NCBI RefSeq assembly: GCF_001194135.2
Contig: NC_068983.1
Coordinates: 30,631,837 to 30,665,559, forward strand
From: Octopus bimaculoides
Taxonomy: Eukaryota
Direction of reading: 5' to 3'
DNA: 33,723 nt
In this document: positions 4,800-33,723 of the stretch, in pieces
Layout of the letters: the number at the start of each line of letters is the position of its first letter
How positions within the stretch are numbered: position 1 is the first letter of the stretch
Program-made: the position numbers and the translations under genes
The notes under the pieces: generated by a model
Seen by the model: only the letters and a program-made list of their open reading frames with translations
Told to the model about the DNA's origin: nothing
Databases searched by the model: none

Positions 4800-5129
4800 A
4801 CCGCCTTTCTGGTACTTGTGCCGGTGGCACGTGTAAAGACATTTGAGCGAGTTCGTTGCCAGTGCCGCTGGACTGGCCCTTGTGCAGGTGGCACGTAAAA
4901 TACACCATTTCGAACGTGGCTGTTGCCAGTACCTCCTGACTGGCCTTCGTGCCGGTGGCACGTAAAAACACCCACTACAGTCTCGGAGTGGTTGGTGTTA
5001 GGGAGGGCATCCAGCTGTAGAAACTCTGCCAAATCAGATTGGAGCCTGGTGTAGCCATCTGGTTCACTAGTCCTCAGTCAAATCGTCCAGCCCATGCTAG
5101 CATGGAAAGTGGACGTTAAGCGATGATGA

Positions 5130-6277: not shown

Positions 6278-6900
6278 TCAGGTTGAGTAAAAAGTAAGCA
6301 ACGTTTTGAAACATGAAAGTCATCACAATATATTTCAACAATGTGGAAATTTTATTCATCAAAATAAACACCATTATAATCAAGATATTTTTGCCAACGA
6401 GTTACAAGTTTGTTTATTCCAGTAACATAAAAATCTGGTGTCTCGGAGCTGATGAACCCTTTGAATACACTTTCAGCATCGGTTTGATTTTTTAACTCTT
6501 TCTCTCACACGAAACCATCAACGTGCTTGAAAAAGTGGTAGTCGGTATGATTACCATTAGTGAAACGTCTGGTTGAGCATTGTCATAAAGAATGAGTGGT
6601 CCTCTTTTGTTGATCAGTCTGGAATGGAGGAATAGCAGTTTTTCGTTCATTTTGGCAATTTCATGGCAATATGTTTCTGTAGTAATAATTTTTCCTGGTT
6701 TAAAGAAGTTATAGTGAATGAGTCCAGAAGTACACCACCAAACAGTCACCATAACATATACTGACAATACTGTGTGTAGATTTCAACAGAATGCAACAAA
6801 CATTTGTTAAATGTTGCAGTTTTTTGACAGTTTTATGTGACACTGTTTCCACAACTGATCGTTGAGGTTCCTGAAGAACCACTACGAACAGCCAACTATA
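6278..6900 (-). mobile_element. Mariner (Hsmar1/Mos1-like) DNA transposon relic with 3' TIR, internally deleted
   Basis: Minus-strand peptides VMVTVWW..GLIHY.F.KPG..IT, LINKRGPLILYDNA, PTDYHFFKH and FY.TGINKLVTRWQKYLDYNGVYFDE* (stop 6352-6354). TA at 6276-6277 is followed by TIR TCAGGTTGAGTAAAAAGTAAGCAACG (6278-6303). Confidence 0.9.
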
Positions 6901-7783: not shown

Positions 7784-7969
7784 TGTTATAATTACTATAA
7801 CACTCACTTCGGTATACAGTATACTTAATAAAACTAGTACAGACACAACCATCTCTGACCGCCTACTACGTACTCTGGTACTTCATGTACTTCTCTTTAC
7901 TTATGGTGACTAAATTATTCCATTCGTCATGTGGGAGGGATGTACTATTATTACTAATTCCCTACAACA
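7784..7969 (-). mobile_element. 3' LTR of Gypsy element
   Basis: Starts TGTTGTAGG directly after polypurine tract AAAAGGGGAGA (7970-7980) and ends ...TATAACA. Confidence 0.7.
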
Positions 7970-10310
7970 TCTCCCCTTTTATGCTTTTCTTAGGTAGTGT
8001 CATTTTATTTAGCAATAATTCTTTTTTATTCCCCCCACCTCCCATTTGTGAGTCTTTTTTTTTTCCATACAATTTTAGTAATTTTTGCACTTGGCATTTA
8101 TATTCAGGAACTCTGTCTGTTTTCTTTTCCTCTCACTTGTACACCTGGGTTCAATCACCTGCAGTGGCATTGGTACTTGGAACATTTCACACACCCATTC
8201 CATCGGTTTCTCCAACTTCTTTGGTTCGCTTTCCACAAATCTCTTTTTCAGCTGGTTCCTGTATCTCTTTTGTATACTTTTTCGACTTTTTATCCAATGC
8301 ATCATTTTACCTATGCATTTGGTAATTACACCATCTTCCCAACTCTGCTTTGCATTCTTGTATGCCCTCATATACACCTTTTCACCAACTTAAAAGAATC
8401 ATACTATGTCTTCCCTGGCATTTTTTCTTTTCTTGCTAGATAGTAATTTATCAAAGACTGATTTTACTTTCCTTGCAAACATCAGCTCTGTTGGTGATCT
8501 ACCTGCTGGTGTATTCAGATTTGGTGTCACACAGTACACTCTTAAGAATTGTTGTAGAGCTACTTCATCTGGAACTTCCTTATTTGATTTTCTAAGGGCT
8601 CTTTTGAAGGTATTGACAAAGCATTCTGCCTGTCCATTAGATCTGGGATGGTATGGCACTGTAGTTCTACCATGTTCTACCATGAATGTTTCACAATATT
8701 TTTTTAATTCACTAGACACAAATTGTGTTCCATTGTCAGACACTATTTTGTCTGAGATGCCAAAACCTTGCAAACAAGTCATGTTAAAAAATTCATGTTA
8801 AAAGAGGTCAGTTTTTTTACACTTTCAGATTTCTGGCCATTTTGAGAAACTATCGATTACCACTAAGTAGTAATAGTTGTTTAAAGGACAAGTGAAATTG
8901 ATGTGTAGTCTGGACAACAGAACATCTACTTTTGGACAATGTTTACTTTTTATCATGGGCAATTTTTCATTTCATTTTAGCTGACATACAGATATTCCAC
9001 TCTGTTTTACTGCAATGTTTTGTTTCAGTCTCTCAGTCACATTCGAACCTTTAACTGAATCGACTATATTTCTGTACAAAACACTTATGGCTGTATTCCA
9101 TACTTTGAATAGTTCCATGCATTCTGTGCCGAATAGATTCAGTGAACTTTTTAACACAAATATCTTAGCCTTTTTGTTTGACCTTGAAATGTTACATTCC
9201 ATATGAATTCACCAAAAAAATATAATCTTTTTCCTGTAACACCATGTGCTACCTTTTGGCTTGCTGACATATTTCCACATTTTTTTCATTTATAATGTTG
9301 ATATTGTCCAACTGCATTTTAACACTTGTATTTATGATTTTCACCTTCACAAATTTTCTCATCATTATATTGCCAATTTCTTCCAATCACATACTATTTA
9401 TTCTTTTGCCATTGTTCTGGCATTTTTCATCTTTGTTCTACACTGCGCTTTTATATGTCCTATATTTCTACAATGAAAGCATTCTGCTCTTTTAAATGGA
9501 CAATTTTCCCTCAGGTGTATACCTCCACATGCAAAATATGGATTTATTTCTTGATTTTTGTCATGATTTTAGAAAACACTTTATCTCTGTTCTGACTATT
9601 TTGCACTTGCTTTACTTGGAAACAATCTTTACTTTCAATTTCCTCTGTGTTGTGTCTAAATTTGACTATCCTTTCACATTCTTCTGACACTTGCTGTAGG
9701 GTTACATCCTCATTTTATTTCAGCTTTGCGAGGATTCTAGTTCTAAATTCTGCGTCCTTTTCAGCAGTAAGTCCCTGTGTAAAAATCAGGCATTTGAACA
9801 TATGGGGTGTTAATTCATCCATCTTAAACTTCTCGCATTTCCTGTTAAATCTACCAGCATGTGATGTAGTCCTTGTTGTTTTTCTCTATGTTCAGATACT
9901 TCCAGCATGTATTGAACAATGAGCTTTTTTTCACTGAAAGTTTTATACAACATATCTATTGTGTCATTAAAGTTTATGTCCAAAGGTCTTCTTGGGAGTA
10001 TATAATTACTGAACCGTTCGTGTTTTGTTGCCGTCAGTTTTCATCTCATCTTCCCAATCTTTACATTCTTTCTCAAAGATTTGCTCATATCTTCTGTAGT
10101 ATGCTTCAAAGTTAACTCCTTCGTCAGGTTCATATTTGAACTCTGTTATGGAGTTCACAACATGGTGAGTGCATCTACTAAAATCTTCAAACTTTGTGCT
10201 TAACAGAGTCAAGGCCATGAAGATATTTATCACATTCGTTTTCAATCTTTACTTAGCATCATCACTATTTCTTCTGTCAGATGACTGAAAATGCTCCCAG
10301 TCTGCTACCA
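7970..10310 (-). mobile_element. Gypsy/Ty3 (K02A2.6-like) LTR retrotransposon internal region: gag, protease and integrase, with RT/RNase H absent
   Basis: PBS TGGTAGCAGA (10301-10310, initiator tRNA-Met type). Gag NSITEFKYEPDEGVNFEAYYRRYE and FKCLIFTQGL..DAEFRTRIL. Zinc knuckle CFHCRNIGHIKAQC (9440-9481). Degenerate protease VKLQLD.. region. Integrase SRLHINF..P...YYLVVIDSFSKWPE, IVSDNGTQF and PYHPRSNGQAE. Multiple stops and frameshifts. Confidence 0.92.
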
Positions 10311-15524: not shown

Positions 15525-15589
<65 letters not shown>

Positions 15590-15599
15590 NNNNNNNNNN

Positions 15600-15660
<61 letters not shown>
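15453..15660. repeat. (CA)n / (TG)n / 10-N gap / (CA)n microsatellite cluster
   Basis: Direct inspection. N at 15590-15599. Confidence 0.9.
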
Positions 15661-15661
<1 letters not shown>

Positions 15662-15677
15662 CACAGATGCACACACA

Positions 15678-15865
15678 TGTGACTGGGTAGTCTAAAGCTT
15701 GCTTCCTAACCATGCAGTCGTGGGTTCAGCCCCACTGCAAGAGTAAAAGTCTTTTGCTATAGCCCTAAGCTGACCAAAGCCTGGTCAGAGGATTTGATAG
15801 ATGAAAACTGAAAGAAGCCAATCATGTGTGTGTGTGTACCTTTGCTTTGCCATCATGTGATGATT
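15678..15865 (+). mobile_element. tRNA-headed SINE, 5' part (continues at 16906-17115)
   Basis: Head GTGACTGGGTAG..AAGCTTGCTTCCTAACC..GGGTTCAG.CCCACTG...GAAAACTGAAAGAAGCC+(TG)n, homologous to the head of 16171-16581. It breaks off at ATGATT. Confidence 0.7.
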
Positions 15866-16008
15866 AATTATTCCCACTTAAATATGGATGTTCTCTTAGA
15901 ATAAACTATACTATGGTAGATACCACGAGAGAAACTCTCATTCTGGCTTTTGGTGCAAAATGCATTGTTGCTTACATTGCTAGTGGGGAGACAAATCCCC
16001 ACCACCTC

Positions 16009-16077
16009 CAGTACTGAGACTACCAGATCACATGATTTCAACCTTCTTTGGTCTTGTCAATGATGTATGCTTGACTG
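16009..16077 (-). ncRNA. Type I hammerhead ribozyme, degenerate copy
   Basis: CAGTCAAGCATACATCA-TTGACAA-GACC-AAAGAA-GGTT-GAAA-TCATGTGA-TC|TGGTAG. Same architecture as 16765-16833, but the core carries C3U and G8A changes. Confidence 0.7.
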
Positions 16078-16170
16078 CTAGCGATTGCAGCGACTCATCT
16101 CCCTGCCAGCGATATATAGTAAAGCAGTGCCAGAACAGGTGCTGGAGTTGCAATTAAAAATATATATATA

Positions 16171-16581
16171 GGCGTAGGAGTGGCTGTGTGGTAAGTAGCT
16201 TGTTTACCAACCACATGGTTCCGGGTTCAGTCCCACTGTGTGGCACCCTGGGCAAGTGTCTTCTACTATAGCCTCAGGCTGACCAAAGCCTTGTGAGTGG
16301 ATTTGGTAGAAGGAAACTGAAAGAAGCCCGTCGTATATATGTATATATATATGTATGTGTGTGTGCATATGTTTGTGTGTCTGTATTTGTCCCCCCCAAC
16401 ATCACTTGACAACCGATGCTGGTGTGTCTACGTCCCTGTAACTTAGTGGTTCAGCAAAAGAAACCTATAGAATAAGTACTAGGCTTACAAAGAATAAGTC
16501 CTGGAGTCGATTTGCTTGACTAAAGGCGGTGCTTCAGCATGGCCACAGTCAAATGACTGAAACAAGTAAAAGACTAAAAGA
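16171..16581 (+). mobile_element. Full-length tRNA-derived SINE with central microsatellite
   Basis: GGCGTAGGAGTGGCTGTGTGGTAAG (A box), CCGGGTTCAGTCCC (B box), central (TA/TG)n, conserved body and tail CAGCATGGCCACAGTCAAATGACTGAAACAAGTAAAAGA. Multiple copies in the window. Confidence 0.92.
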
Positions 16582-16764
16582 ATATTAGCAACAGAGGCAG
16601 GATTAATACCAAGAGGTGAGATTTATTGCCACTTAAATGTGGATGTTCTGTTAGAACAAACTATACTGCAGTAGATACCATGAGAGGAACTCTCAAATTG
16701 GCTTTTGGTGCAAAAATGTTCTCTTGTTTGTATCACTAGTGGGGAGATAAATCACCACCTTCTC

Positions 16765-16833
16765 CAGCCTTGAGACCATCAGATCACGTGATTTCAACCT
16801 TCCTTGGTCTCATCAGTGATAGGTACTTGACTG
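16765..16833 (-). ncRNA. Type I hammerhead ribozyme, near-intact copy
   Basis: CAGTC-AAGTAC-CTATCA-CTGATGA-GACC-AAGGAA-GGTT-GAAA-TCACGTGA-TC|TGATGG-TCTCAA-GGCTG. It has the CUGAUGA and GAAA cores, stem II GACC/GGUU, palindromic helix III AUCACGUGAU and an AUC cleavage triplet (cut between 16782 and 16781). Stem I CUAUCA/UGAUGG has an internal loop and a distal CAGUC/GGCUG helix. Confidence 0.88.
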
Positions 16834-16905
16834 CTAGAGATACCAGTGACTCATTTCTCTGCTGGTGATATAGAGGAAAACAGTGCCAGAAAAGGTACTG
16901 GTGTT

Positions 16906-17115
16906 ATGATTGTAAACAAGAATCCCTGTCATATGAGCAATGCTGTTCATTTCCAGTCTTCCATGATAAAATGTCTGGCCAAAGGGAAATATTACCTCAC
17001 TTGGAAACAGTTGAGTGTTAGCGACAGGAAGTGCATCTTGCCATAAAAACCTCTGCTTCAACAAATTCATCTGACCCATGCAAGCATAGAAAAGTGAATA
17101 GTAAATAATGATGAT
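16906..17115 (+). mobile_element. 3' part of RTE-tailed SINE (continuation of 15678-15865)
   Basis: TTGTAAACAAG...GGGAAATATTACCT.ACTTGGAAACAG..ACAGGAAG.GCATC..CTGACCCATGCAAGCAT.GAAAAGTG..(GAT)n tail. Continuity with the upstream head is inferred from recollection of this SINE family. Confidence 0.65.
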
Positions 17116-19620: not shown

Positions 19621-20517
19621 TAGGTTGGGCAAAGCTCAGAGAGCTCCTACCTTTGGGTGAAAGGTAGATTGTATGATGCCTGTGCATGAAAAGCCATGCT
19701 ACATAGGGCTGTGACTGAGGACATGTGCAGGCCTGAAAGAAATGATGCTAGTATGCTTTGCTGGATGTGCAACGTTAGTGTGCATGTATGACAATGTAAA
19801 CGTCTTGAGAGAAAAGTTGGGCATAAGAGGCATAAGATGTGGTGTGCAAGAGAGACGACTGCACTAGTATGGTCATGTGATGCGTATGGATGTGGACAGC
19901 CGTTTGAAGAAGTGCTGATCTCTACCAGTGGAAGGGAGCTGTGGAAGAAGGAAATCCAGGAAGACAGGGGACAAGGTGGTGAAGCATGATCTGCTAACGT
20001 TGGGTCTCATGGAAGCAATGACTAGTGGCTGAGACCCTTGGTGATATACTGTGCTTGAGAAGACCCGGCAAGCCAAATGAAATCATAGTTGTGGCCATTA
20101 TCGGTGTCATGTAACTGGCACCAATGCCAGAGGCATGTAAAAATCACCCTGTGAGCACTGGGCCTCACAGAGGCAATGTGGCTGATCCCAGTGTCATGTA
20201 ACTAGCACCGATGCCAGTGGCTCTTAAAAAGCACCTTTTGAGCACTGGGCCTCACAGAGGCAATGACAAATGACCAAGACCTTTAGCAGTATACTGTGCT
20301 TAAGAAGAAGATCCCTCAAGCCAAGTGAAATCGTAGTTGTGGTAGATAATGGTGGCACGTAAAAGCACCCATTACATTCTTGGAGTGGTTGGTGTTAGGA
20401 AGGGCACTCAACTGTAGAAACCATGCCAAATCAGACTGGAGTCAGGTGCTTACCAGCTCTGCTCAAAGTACCCAACCCATGCCAGCAGGGACAACAGACA
20501 CTAAATGATGATGATGA
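19621..20517 (+). mobile_element. RTE-clade LINE, 5'-truncated 3' fragment
   Basis: Degenerate VKGRLYDAC..AMLH, ERNDASML.WMCNVSV, LREKLGIRGI..VQERRL..YGHVMRM, G..GR...RKT..VVK.DL. Followed by a 3' UTR with tandem subrepeats and a (GAT)n tail. Confidence 0.88.
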
Positions 20518-21321: not shown

Positions 21322-21545
21322 CTCTTTTACTTGTTTCAGCCATTTGCTGGAGCACCGCCTTTAGTCGAGCAAATCGACCCCAGGATTTATTCCTTGTAAG
21401 CCTAGTACTTCTTCTATCGGTTTCTTTTGCTGAACCGCTAAGTTACGGGGACGTAAACACACCAGCATCGGTTGTCAAACGATGTTGGGGGGACAAACAC
21501 AGACACACAAACATACACACACACACACACACACGCACACACACG

Positions 21546-21579
<34 letters not shown>

Positions 21580-21752
21580 CACACATATACGACAGGCTTC
21601 TTTCAGTTTCCATCTACCAAATCCACTCACAAGGCTTTGGTTGGCCCGAGGCTATAGTAGAAGACACTTGCCCAAGGTTCCACACAGTGGGACTGAATCC
21701 TGAGCCATGTGGTTGGTAAGCAAGCTACTTTCCACACAGTCACTCCTGCGCC
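21322..21752 (-). mobile_element. Full-length tRNA-derived SINE
   Basis: Reverse complement is colinear with 16171-16581, with a small deletion in the tail. Confidence 0.92.
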
Positions 21753-23329: not shown

Positions 23330-23631
23330 CTTTTACTTGTTTCAGTCATTTGACTGTGGCCATGCTGGAGCACCGCCTTTAGACCAAAACACACCAGCAT
23401 CGGTTGTCAAGTGATGTTGGGGAGAACAAACACAGACACACAAACATACATACACACATACATATATACGACGGGCTTCTTTTAGTTTCCGTCTACCAAA
23501 TCCACTCACAAGGCTTTGGTCGGCCCGAGGCTATAGTAGAAAACACTTGCCCAAGGTGCCATGCAGTTGTACTGAACCCGGAACCATGTGGTTCGTAAGC
23601 AAGCTACTTACCACACAGCCACTCCTACGCC
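23330..23631 (-). mobile_element. tRNA-derived SINE with ~100-bp internal deletion
   Basis: Head and tail are intact versus 21322-21752, but CCTTTAG is joined directly to ..AAACACACCAGCATCGG. Confidence 0.9.
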
Positions 23632-23682
23632 TATATACATACATACATACATATCTACATGCATACGTACATATGTATAAAT

Positions 23683-25335: not shown

Positions 25336-25879
25336 CTTTTTCCTGACTTGGATTCCACTTGAGAAAATTTCAGCAGTGTCCTTACCAGAGATTCTCAACA
25401 AAGACGATGCTAATTAAAGAGTATAACATCATGAAACATTTAAATTGGTATGGAATGTTATTGCTGTTATTTCCCCACCCATATCTGAAATGTTGGTGAA
25501 ACATTCCTTCTTTACCTCCACTTTCTTATCAGCACATAATTTAAGGTACATAATGTTTGATTAATTATTTAAGAACAAGCAGAAATGCAACACGCACAAC
25601 GAGAGGATTGAGATATACTACTATGCCAACAGGATGCATAACATCACTGAAAGAATTCTAAGGAATTATCTGGACTTAATTTATTCAATCCCAACCCTCC
25701 TGAGATTGATATGATACAAATTCCCTGTTTCAAAGTGACCTAAATTGAAACCTTCCATCAAAATTCTATATTTATCTACATTCCAAACACCAGTTTTACT
25801 AAATTTTCCATTATTTTCAAAATTAACTGGAACAATAGCTGTGTATTTCAGCAGCTGTTTGGTAACAAAAGGGTAAACT

Positions 25880-26039
25880 GGCTGTGTGGTAAGTAGCTTG
25901 CTTACCAACCGCATGGTTGTGGGTTTAGTCCCACTGTGTGACACCTTGGACAAGTGTCTTCTTCTATAGCCTCGGGCTGACCAAAGCCTTGTGAGTGGAT
26001 ATGGTAGATGGAAACTGGAAGAAGACCGTCGTATATATG

Positions 26040-26070
<31 letters not shown>

Positions 26071-26280
26071 ATATGTTTGCCTGTCTGTGTTTGTCCCCCC
26101 AACATCGCTTGACAACTGATGGTGGTGTGTTTACGTCTCCGTAACTTAGCAGTTCGGCAAAAGAGACCAATAGAATAAGTACTAGGCTTCCAAAGAATAA
26201 GTCCTGGGGTCGATTTGCTCGACTAAAGGCGGTGCTCCAGCATAGCCACAGTCAAATGACTGAAACAAGTAAAACAGTAA
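25880..26280 (+). mobile_element. Near full-length tRNA-derived SINE
   Basis: Colinear with 16171-16581. Confidence 0.92.
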
Positions 26281-26589
26281 ATAGAAACAATGAGATGATG
26301 TATAGACTGAAAAGCAATCACAATGGATATTTTATTTATTTTATAAGACTTAATCAGAAGAGGAATGTCAGGACCTATGAATTTTTTTTTTTTCTTTCAG
26401 CAGGGCTAGGCTTGTGACTGGTGGGAAAAATAAAAGAACATTTTGATATTGTCAAACCAGACACCTCATCTGATTGCTCTCAAAAGTTGAACTCAGAGGT
26501 ATAAGAGGTGGTGTTTAAGTCCACCAGGTGGCAGTTTAAGTTTACAACTCACGAGCAAGTCCAAGACATCTGTCAAACTGCCCCATAGT

Positions 26590-26785: not shown

Positions 26786-27247
<462 letters not shown>

Positions 27248-30372: not shown

Positions 30373-30447
30373 GTGATAAATGAATCAGTGCAGTGATAAA
30401 TGAATTAGTGCAGTGATAAATGAACCAGTGCAGTGATAAATGAATCA
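30373..30447 (+). repeat. 20-bp tandem repeat x ~3.8
   Basis: GTGATAAATGAA(T/C)(C/T)AGTGCA repeated. Confidence 0.9.
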
Positions 30448-30454
30448 GCTTCAT

Positions 30455-30869: not shown

Positions 30870-32500
30870 AAACAAGGATGGATGTACTTAATAAAGGATT
30901 AAAATTTACACTGACTCTTCAAAACAAATCATCCATGTCGGAAATCAAGGGTGGTACTTTAAAATTCTGCAGAAAACATAGACTAGCAAAACAGTTTTAT
31001 TTTTTTGAGGAAGAAAACAAAAATGAAACCTTAATTAAAAAACCAAAAAATTAATAACACCCTATAAAGAAATGCAAATATAGCTGTTGATGAATTGTAT
31101 GAATATATCTCAAACTTTCCAGTAGAAAACTGAAAACAAAGTAAATAGAATCTAACTTTAGCAGACAACAATGGAACCATCTGACCAATTTAAAATTAGA
31201 CAAAAACATAATTATAAAAGAAGCCAACAAAGGAGACTCTGTTGTTATGGATACAGAATACTACACAAGTATTGTACTGAATATACTACAAGACAATATA
31301 TACCATAGAAATAAAAAAAATTACAAAGCTGTTAAAATTGTAAAATAACTGATCATTTTACTACAGTCATATAGAAATTGTTTAATAGATGAAGGACTGA
31401 ATTACCTCACAAATTTCAAATATAAAACAAATAACAGCTATGGGCTACCAAGAATACATAAAAATAAAACCAATCAATGAAGCACATGAAAGAGCAAAGA
31501 CTACTAACTATGTGAATATATCCTCCCTGATTGATTTAAAACTGAGACTGATTGTAGCAAGCTTGACTAGCAAGATACATCACTTAAGTGATTTTCTAGA
31601 CATCTTGCTTAAATCTTTCTTCAGACACATAAAGTGCTTTGTATGAGATGATATCGAAATGCTCAGCCATATACTCAATACAGTAAACAAAAAATACCTT
31701 CATTATTACATTTGATGTTTGTGAAGTAATATAATGGTTTCAGATTTTGCCACAAGGGCAGTGTTGTGAAGTTATATAATAATATTCCACAGAGTTAGAG
31801 AATCAACGTTATTAAATATTGGCTGGAGACTTACTTATGAAATACTAAAATAAACTGATAAAATTTTTTAGTAAATGGTCTGTTTATTTTAGGAAATAAT
31901 TACTTCACATTTGATGAAATTGCTAACCAGTAAAAATCAGGGGCAACTATGGGAACCAAGGTTGCGTCAACCTAGTTATGGAATACCATAAATTGAAGAT
32001 TTTTTAATCCTCCCTGAGATAAATTCAGCTATTATTTGAATGAAAACTGAAAAAGATTCTTAGATAACTGTTTTATTCTAGGGGTGGAAAAACATCACTT
32101 TATTGAACAAATTTCAAAATCTCATCAATAATATAATCCCTAACATCCAATTCCCTATGAAGTTCAGTAATGATAAACTCCCCTTCCTAGATATACTAAT
32201 AACAAAAAGAAACATCATACAAGAAGCTGATATACATTTTAAATCCATCAACTCTCAATGGTATCTTCTATTTATATTGAGTCATCTGAAACACACTCAG
32301 ATTAACATTCCATGGACTAGAAGAAATGAGAAATATACTTATCAAAGGAAAATCCCATCTAAATTTAATCATTTTTAGGATTGAAAAAGCAAAGCAAGTT
32401 AATGTCTTGAAATATCAAGAAATAAAAAGGAAAATGAGAAAATGTTATATCATATACTTTGACTTTTAAGCCAAAGAATATCAAATTCTTTACTGAAGAT
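30870..32500 (+). mobile_element. Penelope-like element (Neptune-type) RT pseudogene
   Basis: DVLNKGLKFT, FCRKHRL, IIIKEANKGDSVV.MD, YGLPRIHK, LRLIVA, GATMGTKVA, KRFLDNCF, NIQF...DKLPFLDILI and SHLKHTQINIP. Many stops and frameshifts. Confidence 0.88.
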
Positions 32501-33332
32501 CTGTCTAAATCATTCAGATAATTTAAGATGCATTAAAAAGTGCAAAAGTTGCCATGAACACTGCACTGAATAAACAGGTACAATATTCATAAAAAAGATG
32601 ACAGCTCATTACCAATAGATCAGGGAATCATATACAAGGAAAATTTTCTTGAATCAACATCGAGAAAATTGTTGGTGATACAGTTTATTCAACTACTCCA
32701 TCTTCTCATTCTACCGGTGCAGTAGTGACTCAACAATGGGACAGTGACATGCCAAGAAAGAAATACATTTTATCAACAAATACCAATCAAAAATTAAATG
32801 CATTATGCTTTGAATAATATATGCCCTCATTATGATTTCAAAAACTTTGAAGAAATTACTTTTTTTTAAACCATAGAATCACTGGTTATGTCTAGTAGCA
32901 TTCAAAAACATAAATAACATTAACCACACAACAGCTCTATCCCTTGTCATTGAAACGACTTAAGTAACATACATTTTCAAATCTAACAAGACCACATATG
33001 AAATAAACATGAGGACAGAAAGATGGTTTAGAAGAATCTTAGGAAAACACTACACATTTAGATGAGTGCCAATATTATTCTTTGATAAGCCCAAAACAAT
33101 GAAAAGCAGTTAGTGAATTCCTATTTTTATTGAAGCAATCTTGTACTTTAAATTTGTATATACGATAAAAAAATTCCATTATCTTTTGTGTGAAAAAAGA
33201 AACTGTAATTTATCCTGTAAAATTTTCTCTACCTGAATTATAAGAATTAGAATAACCCTACTTGGCACCTTTTCAAATTTTTGTTATTTCTTCCTCCTCT
33301 CTCTCTCTGTATGTGTGTGTGCATGTATATAT

Positions 33333-33723
33333 ATGGGTAGTTCAGATTCAGCCCAGGTTGCTGATGTGGTTTGTGCTTTTATACTTTATGAATTAGCTGA
33401 TCAATTCCCAAATATTAGAGGGGGTTTTTATAGAGATGATTGTCTCTTATTTCTCAGAGATAGTTCGAAACAACAGGTACAAAGGGTAAAAAATAGATTA
33501 GCTAGATTTTTTCGTAGAATAGGAATGAATATTATTTTTGAGGATAATATATCTGTAGCTAATTTTTTAGATGTTACACTTGATCTACATAATAATTCAT
33601 ATAGGCCGTATCATAAACCTTCAACTAACCTTAGGTATATTAGTAAATTTAGTAATCATCCAAAAGCAATAATAGATAATTTAGTTCACAGTATATCATT
33701 AAGATTGTCTAACCTATCCGCTA
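33333..33723 (+). mobile_element. Penelope-like RT (YRDD type, Naiad-like), 5'-truncated, frame open to the window end
   Basis: Uninterrupted 130 codons MGSSDSAQVADVVCAFILYEL...GGFYRDDCL...NFLDVTLDL..NSYRPYHKP...YISKFSNHP...ISLRLSNLSA. It is missing from the ORF track, presumably because it runs off the window without a stop. Confidence 0.85.

What the first reader, a model, noticed from the sequence alone, without database searches (positions are those of the whole stretch)
15866..16905. Tandem hammerhead-ribozyme repeat: candidate octopus retrozyme (circRNA-forming non-autonomous retroelement)
Seen in sequence: two head-to-tail diverged copies of an ~340-nt unit (756 nt between predicted cleavage sites minus the ~411-nt SINE). 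Each has a type I hammerhead on the minus strand and no convincing ORF. Copy 2 (16765-16833) has intact CUGAUGA/GAAA cores, an AUC site and a stem I internal loop placed to contact loop II. Established: animal non-LTR retrozymes are tandem repeats of a few hundred nt with one type I hammerhead per unit; they self-cleave into monomers, circularise, and are thought to be moved by Penelope-like elements. Inference: this is such a family, and I do not know of one described from octopus.
Basis: partly seen in the sequence, partly recalled or inferred. Interest (0 to 1): 0.88.

Follow-up and report, generated by a model that had tools for sequence, protein, structure and literature searches.

The report
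Decayed hammerhead-ribozyme repeat pair in octopus
Two old, diverged head-to-tail copies of a ~340-base non-coding unit carry a self-cleaving hammerhead ribozyme motif, most likely the dead remnant of a circular-RNA "retrozyme" retroelement of a kind already known from other animals, including molluscs.

Summary
Two direct copies (15868-16150 and 16623-16906, 283 nt, 80.6% identical) are separated by a 415-nt tRNA-derived SINE and about 57 nt of unit sequence. That gives 1.83 units of about 341 nt.

On the minus strand, copy 2 carries a canonical metazoan type I hammerhead: CUGAUGA/GAAA/C17 core, helix I 6 bp plus an internal loop, helix II 4 bp with a 6-nt loop, and a short palindromic helix III. 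A strict descriptor finds only this site in the window and none in 30 Mb of random sequence of the same composition. Rfam scores it only 26 bits (HH9), below the gathering score of 52.

Copy 1 has U3/A8 in place of C3/G8 and a weakened helix I. The ribozyme region is no better conserved than the rest of the unit, and both copies have G10.1-U11.1.

The best reading is a roughly 30-My-old, inactive relic of a non-LTR retrozyme, that is, a non-autonomous element dependent on Penelope-like elements (PLEs). No PLE reading frame is attached.

The family-level tests could not be done: copy number, longer arrays, consensus and circRNA. The 228 kb of Octopus sinensis and O. bimaculoides DNA I could fetch holds no other copy.

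This would be a new member of a known kind, of modest interest.

The parts
16623..16906 (-). Repeat copy 2. This is the 5' unit on the ribozyme strand and carries the intact-core hammerhead.
   Evidence: 283-nt alignment to copy 1 at 80.6% identity. GC 41%.
16757..16835 (-). Type I hammerhead of copy 2. Outer helix I is CAGUC/GGCUG. The internal loop is AAGUAC / UCUCAA. Inner helix I is CUAUCA/UGAUGG (6 bp). The core is CUGAUGA. Helix II is GACC-AAGGAA-GGUU. GAAA follows, then helix III AUC-ACGU-GAU and C17. Predicted cleavage is 3' of the complement of G16782.
   Evidence: Rfam HH9 26.1 bits, E 7e-4. Only descriptor hit in the window. 0 hits in 30 Mb of random sequence. All 18 modelled pairs form.
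16586..16622 (-). Unit-specific spacer, part 1. It is present once and lies between the SINE and copy 2.
   Evidence: Not part of the SINE. Not repeated at either end of the array.
16171..16585 (+). A tRNA-derived octopus SINE inserted secondarily into the unit. It is not part of the element. It stretches the distance between cleavage sites from about 341 to 756 nt.
   Evidence: Full-length alignment at 88% to an O. sinensis copy, L004. Further copies at 88-93% identity in L008 and L010 and elsewhere in the window.
16151..16170 (-). Unit-specific spacer, part 2. It is A/T-rich and directly abuts the SINE insertion point.
15868..16150 (-). Repeat copy 1. This is the 3' unit on the ribozyme strand.
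   Evidence: GC 43%.
16001..16083 (-). Degenerate hammerhead of copy 1. The core is UUGACAA (U3...A8 in place of C3...G8). Helices II and III are intact, 2 of 6 inner helix I pairs and 1 of 5 outer pairs are broken, and the homologous site is after the complement of G16026.
   Evidence: Alignment A3 and pair check. Not reported by Rfam even at E<=10. Hammerhead-fold energy only -4.5 kcal/mol.
15679..15860 (+). Left flank: a truncated copy of the same SINE family, ending just before the array. This is context and not part of the element.
   Evidence: Local alignment to the inserted SINE and repeat family D9.

Best explanation
The locus is the inactive relic of a non-LTR retrozyme insertion in an Octopus genome. 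A retrozyme is a short non-coding retroelement, non-autonomous and thought to depend on Penelope-like elements (PLEs). Its ~341-nt unit carries one canonical type I hammerhead on the minus strand.

**Inferred life cycle of the parent family.**
1. A multimeric minus-strand transcript folds its hammerheads. Because helix III (AUCACGUGAU) is short and palindromic, two neighbouring ribozymes may pair through it as a double hammerhead.
2. The transcript cleaves after C17 of each unit, releasing a ~341-nt monomer with 5'-OH and 2',3'-cyclic phosphate ends.
3. The monomer is ligated into a highly base-paired circle, by a tRNA ligase of the RtcB type or by the ribozyme itself.
4. A PLE reverse transcriptase copies the circle by rolling circle into tandem cDNA, which integrates. 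Here it left 1.83 units.

**What is shown here.** The repeat, the ribozyme motif and its architecture, the low GC, the absence of coding, the above-random self-pairing of the unit, and the absence of an adjoining PLE gene.

**What is inferred.** Transcription, cleavage, circularisation, mobilisation by PLEs, and the existence of sister copies.

**After insertion.** The two units drifted neutrally (JC distance 0.22 between them) and a SINE landed inside the unit. The locus itself is therefore very unlikely to make circles today.
For: **The repeat is real.** 283 nt, 80.6% identity, E 1e-71.

**The hammerhead in copy 2 is unlikely to be chance.** It has a full core, and its architecture is the one Cervera & de la Pena describe for canonical metazoan type I hammerheads: helix I 6 bp, helix II 4 bp, helix III short and palindromic (PMC4209133). 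It also has a 6-nt loop 2, and a UAC in the helix I internal loop that aligns with the HH9 consensus. The descriptor finds 1 site in the window, 0 in 187 kb of other DNA and 0 in 30 Mb of random sequence.

**The unit fits the published retrozyme description.** It measures 341 nt, within the 150-450 bp range, with 'dimers to large multimers', GC below 45% and no ORF, LTR, PBS or PPT (PMC7229834). GC here is 41-43% and the longest ORF is 57 aa.

**The unit is self-paired.** The SINE-free monomer folds as a circle at -94.8 kcal/mol, against -75.9 +/- 5.2 for 200 dinucleotide shuffles (z = -3.7, none as stable).

**A double hammerhead is possible.** The helix III segments of the two copies can form a 10-bp duplex at -12.5 kcal/mol.

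**PLEs coexist in octopus genomes.** PMC13282606 and PMC8967140 report them, and a decayed RT-bearing remnant lies at 30878-32800.

**Nothing PLE-like is attached.** There is no RT/EN coding sequence within several kb, and the unit has no similarity to anything else in the window.
Against: - Only one locus is known. There is no other copy in the 33.7-kb window or in 228 kb of O. sinensis and O. bimaculoides DNA. There are also no hits in the metagenome or viral collections or among predicted proteins.
- The Rfam score is less than half the gathering score.
- Both copies have G10.1-U11.1 in place of the highly conserved G-C.
- The second ribozyme is non-canonical, so the 'two consecutive complete hammerheads' criterion of Li et al. 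2026 is not met.
- The hammerhead region is no more conserved than the rest of the unit (80% against 78-82%).
- The monomeric hammerhead fold (-11.7 kcal/mol) is far from the minimum free energy fold of that segment (-26.8).
- No clear target-site duplication is present.
Confidence: 0.62

Rival explanations
1. The locus is the remnant of a Penelope-like element itself. The two 283-nt repeats would be its pseudo-LTRs, left after internal deletion or extreme 5' truncation of the RT-EN reading frame. The hammerhead would then be the PLE's own terminal ribozyme and not that of a separate non-autonomous family.
For: - PLEs carry hammerheads in both flanking repeats and insert as partial tandems (PMC4209133; PMC8557442).
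- The repeat / 57 nt / repeat layout looks like pLTR / stub / pLTR.
- Li et al. 2026 find retrozyme consensus sequences nested among PLE pLTRs, so the two categories grade into one another.
- PLEs expanded in octopus at JC ~0.2, the same order as the divergence seen here.
Against: - No RT or GIY-YIG coding sequence adjoins the repeats. The nearest RT-bearing remnant is 14 kb away on the opposite strand and shares no sequence with the unit.
- Metazoan PLE hammerheads are 'minimal': helix II 7-8 bp, helix I 4-5 bp, an extra nucleotide before helix II, and almost no helix III. This one has the canonical 6/4 architecture with an internal loop.
Confidence: 0.15
2. The locus is a solitary genomic hammerhead in otherwise unique DNA, like the isolated HH9/HH10-type motifs of amniotes. 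It would have been duplicated locally by an ordinary tandem duplication. On this reading it is not mobile and not a family.
For: - The best Rfam match is HH9, a family of isolated conserved hammerheads.
- No second locus was found in any searchable sequence.
- There are only 1.83 units and no clear target-site duplication.
Against: - Nothing suggests conservation. The ribozyme drifts at the same rate as its flanks.
- Unit size, GC content and the strong self-pairing of the unit are retrozyme-like.
- The surroundings are transposon debris.
- The 228 kb sampled only excludes more than about 36,000 copies per 2.7 Gb.
Confidence: 0.13
3. The hammerhead is a chance motif inside an unrelated duplicated sequence and was never a ribozyme.
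For: - Rfam gives only 26 bits against a gathering score of 52, and nothing at curated thresholds.
- G-U at 10.1-11.1.
- The minimum free energy fold is not the hammerhead fold.
- A relaxed descriptor would give a few hundred chance sites in a 2.7-Gb genome (3 per 30 Mb).
Against: - The strict descriptor that the site satisfies gave 0 hits in 30 Mb of random sequence.
- Several features that the descriptor did not require match the canonical metazoan architecture: exact helix lengths, a 6-nt loop 2, UAC in loop 1, an outer closing stem, a palindromic helix III, and a location in a ~340-nt tandem unit.
Confidence: 0.07

Closest known systems
Metazoan non-LTR retrozymes (Cervera & de la Pena 2020, NAR; e.g. 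Mytilus galloprovincialis 350-390-bp repeats, Acropora 220-240 bp, axolotl 330/350 bp)
   Same: - One canonical type I hammerhead per ~340-nt non-coding, low-GC unit.
- Head-to-tail arrangement ('from dimers to large multimers').
- A predicted highly self-paired circular monomer.
- Coexistence with PLEs in the host genome.
   Different: - Only 1.83 units at a single known locus.
- The units are 19% diverged and interrupted by a SINE.
- The second ribozyme has a U3/A8 core and a weakened helix I.
- Both copies have G10.1-U11.1.
- No expression, circularity or copy-number data.
- No cephalopod example is described in the papers searched.
Penelope-like element pseudo-LTRs with minimal hammerheads (Cervera & de la Pena 2014; Lunse et al. 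2017 from memory; Li, Clavereau & Pollet 2026 preprint)
   Same: - Direct terminal repeats that each carry a type I hammerhead.
- A palindromic helix III that suggests action as a dimer.
- The U3-A8 core covariation seen in copy 1 is a documented natural variant in Schistosoma PLE hammerheads.
- Retrozymes are argued to derive from pLTRs.
   Different: - No RT/GIY-YIG reading frame between or beside the repeats.
- The hammerhead has canonical architecture (helix I 6 bp plus internal loop, helix II 4 bp, no extra nucleotide before 10.1), not the minimal architecture.
Rfam Hammerhead_HH9 (RF02275) / Hammerhead_1 (RF00163)
   Same: HH9 is the best-scoring covariance model. The core, both loop sizes and the UAC of the helix I bulge all align.
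   Different: - 26.1 bits against a gathering score of 52, so this is not a member by Rfam's criterion.
- HH9 is an isolated, conserved amniote intronic ribozyme, not a repeat.
- 235 Hammerhead_1 loci have been reported in the giant squid genome without further characterisation (PMC6962438).
Newt/salamander satellite 2 and Schistosoma Sm-alpha hammerhead repeats
   Same: - A ~330-nt tandem unit with one type I hammerhead.
- A short helix III that favours double-hammerhead cleavage of multimeric transcripts.
   Different: Those are families of thousands to more than 100,000 copies with demonstrated transcripts and cleavage. Here there is one decayed pair.

Membership tests
Canonical metazoan type I hammerhead ribozyme | Conserved catalytic core: C3 U4 G5 A6 N7 G8 A9, G12 A13 A14, A15.1-U16.1, H17 | tested here: met
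   Copy 2 has CUGAUGA ... GAAA ... U-C17. Copy 1 has U3 and A8 instead, which is a paired change.
Canonical metazoan type I hammerhead ribozyme | Helix I 6 bp and helix II 4 bp, helix III short with a palindromic loop, open end at helix I (PMC4209133) | tested here: met
   Copy 2 has helix I 6 bp, an internal loop and a 5-bp outer stem. Helix II is 4 bp with a 6-nt loop. Helix III is AUC-ACGU-GAU, a 10-nt palindrome.
Canonical metazoan type I hammerhead ribozyme | G10.1-C11.1 pair at the base of helix II | tested here: not met
Both copies read GACC...GGUU, giving G10.1-U11.1. It cannot be checked with two copies.
Canonical metazoan type I hammerhead ribozyme | Loop 1 / loop 2 nucleotides that make the tertiary contact | tested here: inconclusive
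   The UAC 5' of inner helix I aligns with the HH9 consensus UAC, and loop 2 has the same length (6 nt) but a different sequence, AAGGAA.
Canonical metazoan type I hammerhead ribozyme | Score at or above the Rfam gathering threshold | tested here: not met
   26.1 bits against 52 for RF02275. No hit at gathering thresholds.
Canonical metazoan type I hammerhead ribozyme | Site-specific self-cleavage | not testable with these tools
   Needs in vitro transcription of monomer and dimer.
Non-LTR retrozyme | Short (150-450 bp) head-to-tail tandem units, dimer or longer, one type I hammerhead per unit | tested here: met
   341-nt unit, 1.83 copies, a hammerhead or its remnant at the same position in each.
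Non-LTR retrozyme | [quoted passage not shown] 2026) | tested here: not met
   Copy 1 fails the canonical core and has only 4 of 6 inner helix I pairs. It is not found by the descriptor or by Rfam at E<=10.
Non-LTR retrozyme | Low GC (<45-50%), non-coding, no LTR/PBS/PPT | tested here: met
   GC 41-43%. The longest ORF is 57 aa. By reading the sequence there are no TG...CA termini and no convincing PBS.
Non-LTR retrozyme | Multi-copy dispersed family in the host genome | tested here: inconclusive
   No other copy in the window or in 228 kb from two Octopus assemblies. That sample only excludes more than about 1 copy per 76 kb. No whole cephalopod genome could be searched.
Non-LTR retrozyme | Monomer predicted or observed as a highly self-paired circular RNA | tested here: met
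   This covers the prediction only. The circular fold is -94.8 kcal/mol, z = -3.7 against shuffles. Observing circles is not testable here.
Non-LTR retrozyme | Coexistence with autonomous PLEs | tested here: inconclusive
   The literature reports PLEs in Octopus. The RT-bearing remnant at 30878-32800 looks PLE-like from memory of the motifs only, and Pfam is silent.
PLE pseudo-LTR | Repeats flank, or adjoin, an RT + GIY-YIG reading frame | tested here: not met
   Only 57 nt plus a SINE lie between the repeats, and there is no RT/EN coding sequence in the flanks.
PLE pseudo-LTR | Minimal hammerhead architecture: long helix II, short helix I, bulged nucleotide before helix II, almost no helix III | tested here: not met
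   The architecture is canonical.

The most novel reading that the evidence does not exclude
This relic would point to a still-active cephalopod retrozyme family. Elsewhere in octopus genomes there would be longer arrays of an intact ~340-nt unit. These would be transcribed and processed into abundant small circular RNAs, for example in neural tissue. Both C3-G8 and U3-A8 core variants would be maintained by selection on the ribozyme. That would be the first retrozyme system in cephalopods.
Probability: 0.25. Interest if true: 0.5.

Novelty: new member of a known kind. Interest (0 to 1): 0.3.

Why it matters
If a family stands behind this relic, it would extend ribozyme-processed circular-RNA retroelements to cephalopods. 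Their genomes are unusually repeat-rich, and their RNA biology (editing, brain-expressed retroelements) is under active study. It would also give a concrete ~340-nt query for finding such circles in octopus RNA-seq data.

As it stands, the locus is a single decayed copy pair of a kind of element already documented in molluscs and many other animals. It adds a data point rather than a concept.

Tried and rejected
1. **Rfam.** Nothing at gathering thresholds over the whole window or over 140 kb of octopus loci.
2. **Exact-pattern scans.** Two scans of the hammerhead core in the metagenome collection and two in the viral collection gave 0 hits. These collections are unlikely to hold cephalopod DNA.
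3. **Six-frame translation.** I searched the translated frames of both units, joined into one query, against 5.8 billion predicted proteins to catch spurious ORFs from sister copies. Nothing scored at E<=10.
4. **Route through the RT fragment.** I used the fragment at the window's end to reach octopus PLE loci. There was one hit at 42% identity, on an unrelated ENA contig that shares no DNA with the window.
5. **Same-locus look-up.** I looked up the window's own integrase ORF to find the same locus in another assembly. It is not on record.
6. **Own covariance model.** Model R1 was built from the two hammerheads. Its only weak hits (E ~0.4, in L002 and L007) are the coding 3' ends of a LINE family, so they are chance.
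7. **Extending the array.** A search for a third unit or a longer repeat showed that the flanks are unrelated to the spacer.
8. **TRIM or LTR-retrozyme reading.** Rejected by reading the sequence. There are no TG...CA termini. The only PBS-like string is a 6-nt TGGTAT. The only purine-rich run is on the strand opposite the ribozyme.
9. **Selection on the ribozyme.** None detected. Identity is 80% in the hammerhead against 78-82% elsewhere. The helices show 2 compatible one-sided changes and 3 broken pairs.
10. **Minimum free energy folding.** Folding each hammerhead segment alone does not reproduce the active fold. This is expected for a weak helix III and is not informative.
Full report
**1. 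What is in the sequence**

The window is a draft eukaryotic scaffold. It has six runs of N, many microsatellites and 35% GC.

Two direct copies lie at 15868-16150 and 16623-16906. They align over 283 nt at 80.6% identity with blastn E 1e-71.

The sequence between them has three parts:
- 20 A/T-rich nt (16151-16170);
- a 415-nt tRNA-derived SINE (16171-16585);
- 37 nt of further unique sequence (16586-16622).

The SINE ends were fixed by aligning it to a full-length 88% copy from the Octopus sinensis chromosome record CM016866.1.

Neither flank of the array resembles the 57-nt spacer. The array is therefore 283 + 57 + 283 nt, or 1.83 units of about 341 nt, and the SINE is a later insertion.

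**2. The ribozyme**

On the minus strand, copy 2 reads:

5'-CAGUC AAGUAC CUAUCA CUGAUGA GACC AAGGAA GGUU GAAA UCACGUGAU C | UGAUGG UCUCAA GGCUG-3'

Every invariant hammerhead position is present, including C17.
- Inner helix I has 6 bp. A 6+6-nt internal loop and a 5-bp closing stem follow.
- Helix II has 4 bp and a 6-nt loop.
- Helix III is AUC-ACGU-GAU, a perfect 10-nt palindrome.

All 18 modelled pairs form. Cervera & de la Pena give exactly this architecture for 'canonical' metazoan type I hammerheads: helix I 6 bp, helix II 4 bp, helix III short with a palindromic loop (PMC4209133).

Rfam's best model is HH9, at 26.1 bits and E 7e-4 for the 1.4 kb searched. The UAC of the helix I bulge aligns to the consensus. 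The score is far below the gathering score of 52, and nothing is listed at curated thresholds.

I measured the chance rate with a descriptor: CUGANGA, GAAA, U16.1-H17, helix I >=5 bp, helix II >=4 bp, helix III >=3 bp.
- It finds this site only in the window, and nothing in 187 kb of fetched loci.
- It finds nothing in 30 Mb of first-order Markov sequence trained on octopus DNA.
- A relaxed version gives 3 hits per 30 Mb, about 0.006 expected per window.

I take the motif as real, with two blemishes:
- Both copies have G10.1-U11.1 where G-C is nearly universal.
- The monomeric hammerhead fold (-11.7 kcal/mol) is not the minimum free energy fold of the segment (-26.8). This is usual for hammerheads with a weak helix III.

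**3. Copy 1**

The homologous segment (16083-16001) reads UUGACAA in place of CUGAUGA.
- Position 7 is free to vary.
- The two changes that matter are C3->U and G8->A.
- C3 and G8 pair in the active ribozyme. U3-A8 is a natural covariation, reported in about 1,300 Schistosoma PLE hammerheads (PMC4209133).

The core of copy 1 is therefore changed in a compensated way and not simply destroyed. But copy 1 has also lost 2 of 6 inner and 1 of 5 outer helix I pairs. Its hammerhead fold is worth only -4.5 kcal/mol.

With 19% divergence and a transition bias (38 transitions to 17 transversions), two such transitions could coincide by chance at roughly the few-percent level. I record this as suggestive only.

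**4. No sign of present function at this locus**

- Identity between the copies is 80% in the hammerhead and 78-82% in the rest of the unit.
- In the helices there are 2 compatible one-sided changes and 3 broken pairs. Together these look like neutral drift.
- The JC distance between the units is 0.22. If they were identical at insertion, that is 0.11 per copy.
- On the O. vulgaris repeat timescale (JC 0.2 is about 56 My; PMC13282606), this is of the order of 30 My.
- The SINE now splits the unit.

**5. Features of the unit as a whole**

- GC is 41-43%.
- The longest ORF inside a unit is 57 aa.
- The SINE-free 341-nt monomer, taken from cleavage site to cleavage site, folds as a circle at -94.8 kcal/mol. 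Two hundred dinucleotide shuffles give -75.9 +/- 5.2 (z = -3.7), and none is as stable.
- The helix III palindromes of the two copies can pair as a 10-bp duplex at -12.5 kcal/mol. This is the geometry of a double hammerhead in a multimeric transcript.

These match the published description of animal non-LTR retrozymes: units of 150-450 bp, dimers to large multimers, GC below 45-50%, no LTR/PBS/PPT, highly self-paired circRNAs of 170-400 nt (PMC7229834).

**6. Host and surroundings**

A Ty3-like integrase fragment at 8399-8782(-) has its closest named homologues (66-79% identity) in O. sinensis and O. bimaculoides. The retroelement around it is 80-86% identical in DNA to copies in both species, and the SINE has 88-93% copies mostly in O. 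sinensis loci. The window is therefore from an Octopus-lineage genome.

The array sits in transposon debris. A truncated SINE of the same family ends just left of it. To the right there are about 300 nt with no repeat match, followed by microsatellite and another common repeat.

No RT or endonuclease coding sequence lies next to the array. The nearest RT-bearing remnant (30878-32800, + strand) is 14 kb away on the other strand and shares no sequence with the unit. From memory its motifs look PLE-like, but Pfam does not confirm this.

**7. Search for sister copies**

No tool here searches a cephalopod genome.
- Pattern scans of the metagenome and viral collections were empty.
- A six-frame protein search was empty.
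- Through paralogues of the integrase I fetched ten loci, 228 kb in all, from GCA_006345805.1 and GCA_001194135.2.
- blastn, my descriptor and a covariance model built from the two hammerheads (R1) found no further copy.
- The two weak R1 hits are LINE coding sequence.

This bounds the density only at less than about 1 copy per 76 kb. The question 'family or single locus' stays open.

**8. Interpretation**

| Reading | Probability |
|---|---|
| Dead relic of a non-LTR retrozyme (non-autonomous, PLE-dependent element) | ~0.6 |
| PLE pseudo-LTR pair after loss of the coding region | ~0.15 |
| Solitary ribozyme duplicated locally | ~0.13 |
| Chance motif | ~0.07 |

- The retrozyme mechanism (multimeric transcript, hammerhead or double-hammerhead cleavage, ligation to a circle, rolling-circle reverse transcription by a PLE, tandem integration) is taken from the literature. 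None of it is shown here.
- The pseudo-LTR reading is disfavoured by the canonical rather than minimal ribozyme and by the absence of any ORF. Li et al. 2026 argue that the two categories are evolutionarily continuous.
- The local-duplication reading cannot be excluded without genome-wide copy counts.

**9. Novelty**

Papers in the library that hold 'retrozyme' and 'octopus', or 'hammerhead' with 'cephalopod' or 'octopus', do not describe such an element. The recent O. vulgaris repeat annotation mentions no hammerhead, ribozyme or retrozyme.

However, 235 Rfam Hammerhead_1 loci were listed for the giant squid (PMC6962438). Retrozymes are established in mussels and said to occur in many invertebrate phyla.

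This is at most a new member of a known kind, seen as one decayed locus. I score interest at 0.3.

Noticed in passing
window 16001-16083 (-), core at about 16050-16056: The two functionally important core differences of copy 1 (C3->U and G8->A) preserve the C3-G8 Watson-Crick pair as U3-A8. The same covariation is reported as a natural variant in Schistosoma PLE hammerheads (PMC4209133). It could be chance, since both are transitions, or a trace of selection while the units were still replicating.
   Followed up: partly
window 16782-16791 and 16026-16035 (-): Helix III is a perfect 10-nt palindrome in copy 2 (AUCACGUGAU). In copy 1 (AUCAUGUGAU) it is off by one CpG-type transition. The two segments can form a 10-bp intermolecular helix at -12.5 kcal/mol, the geometry of a double hammerhead.
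   Followed up: partly
window 15859-15864 and 16908-16913: The hexamer ATGATT occurs just outside both ends of the array and could be a target-site duplication. It could equally be the degenerate edge of the unit.
   Followed up: partly
window 15679-15860, 16171-16585, ~21345-21750, ~23387-23633, ~25879-26295, ~27081-27171: There are at least six full or partial copies of one tRNA-derived SINE family. Copies at 88-93% identity occur in the O. sinensis loci. Rfam does not call its tRNA-like head.
   Followed up: partly
window ~7796-10170 (-): An internally deleted Ty3/gypsy-like retroelement. It has a gag zinc knuckle (zf-CCHC) and an intact 127-aa integrase ORF (8399-8782). It is 80-86% identical in DNA to copies in both O. 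sinensis and O. bimaculoides.
   Followed up: partly
window 6492-6767 (-): A mariner-type transposase fragment (Pfam PF01359, E 3e-12).
   Followed up: yes
window 30878-32800 (+) and 33402-33723 (+): Frameshifted remnants of an RT-bearing retroelement. Its motif order (PKIHK-like, RPIVS-like, YRDD, FLD, SNHP, then CxxC and a GIY-YIG-like stretch) looks Penelope-like from memory. Pfam gives nothing. The only database relative is a 42%-identical ORF on an unrelated ENA contig.
   Followed up: partly
L002 4355-4422 (-), L007 21231-21298 (+): The weak matches to my hammerhead model are the conserved C-terminal coding end of a LINE family shared by the two loci. They are unrelated to the finding.
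   Followed up: yes
window 20104-20265, 4815-4972, 30373-30448: Short tandem repeats: 87 nt (x1.9), 67 nt (x2.4) and 20 nt (x3.8). I did not examine them.
   Followed up: no
window 15528-15677: A (TG)31 run and a (CA)39 run face each other across a 10-N assembly gap and form a near-perfect inverted repeat. This may be an assembly artefact at the gap.
   Followed up: no
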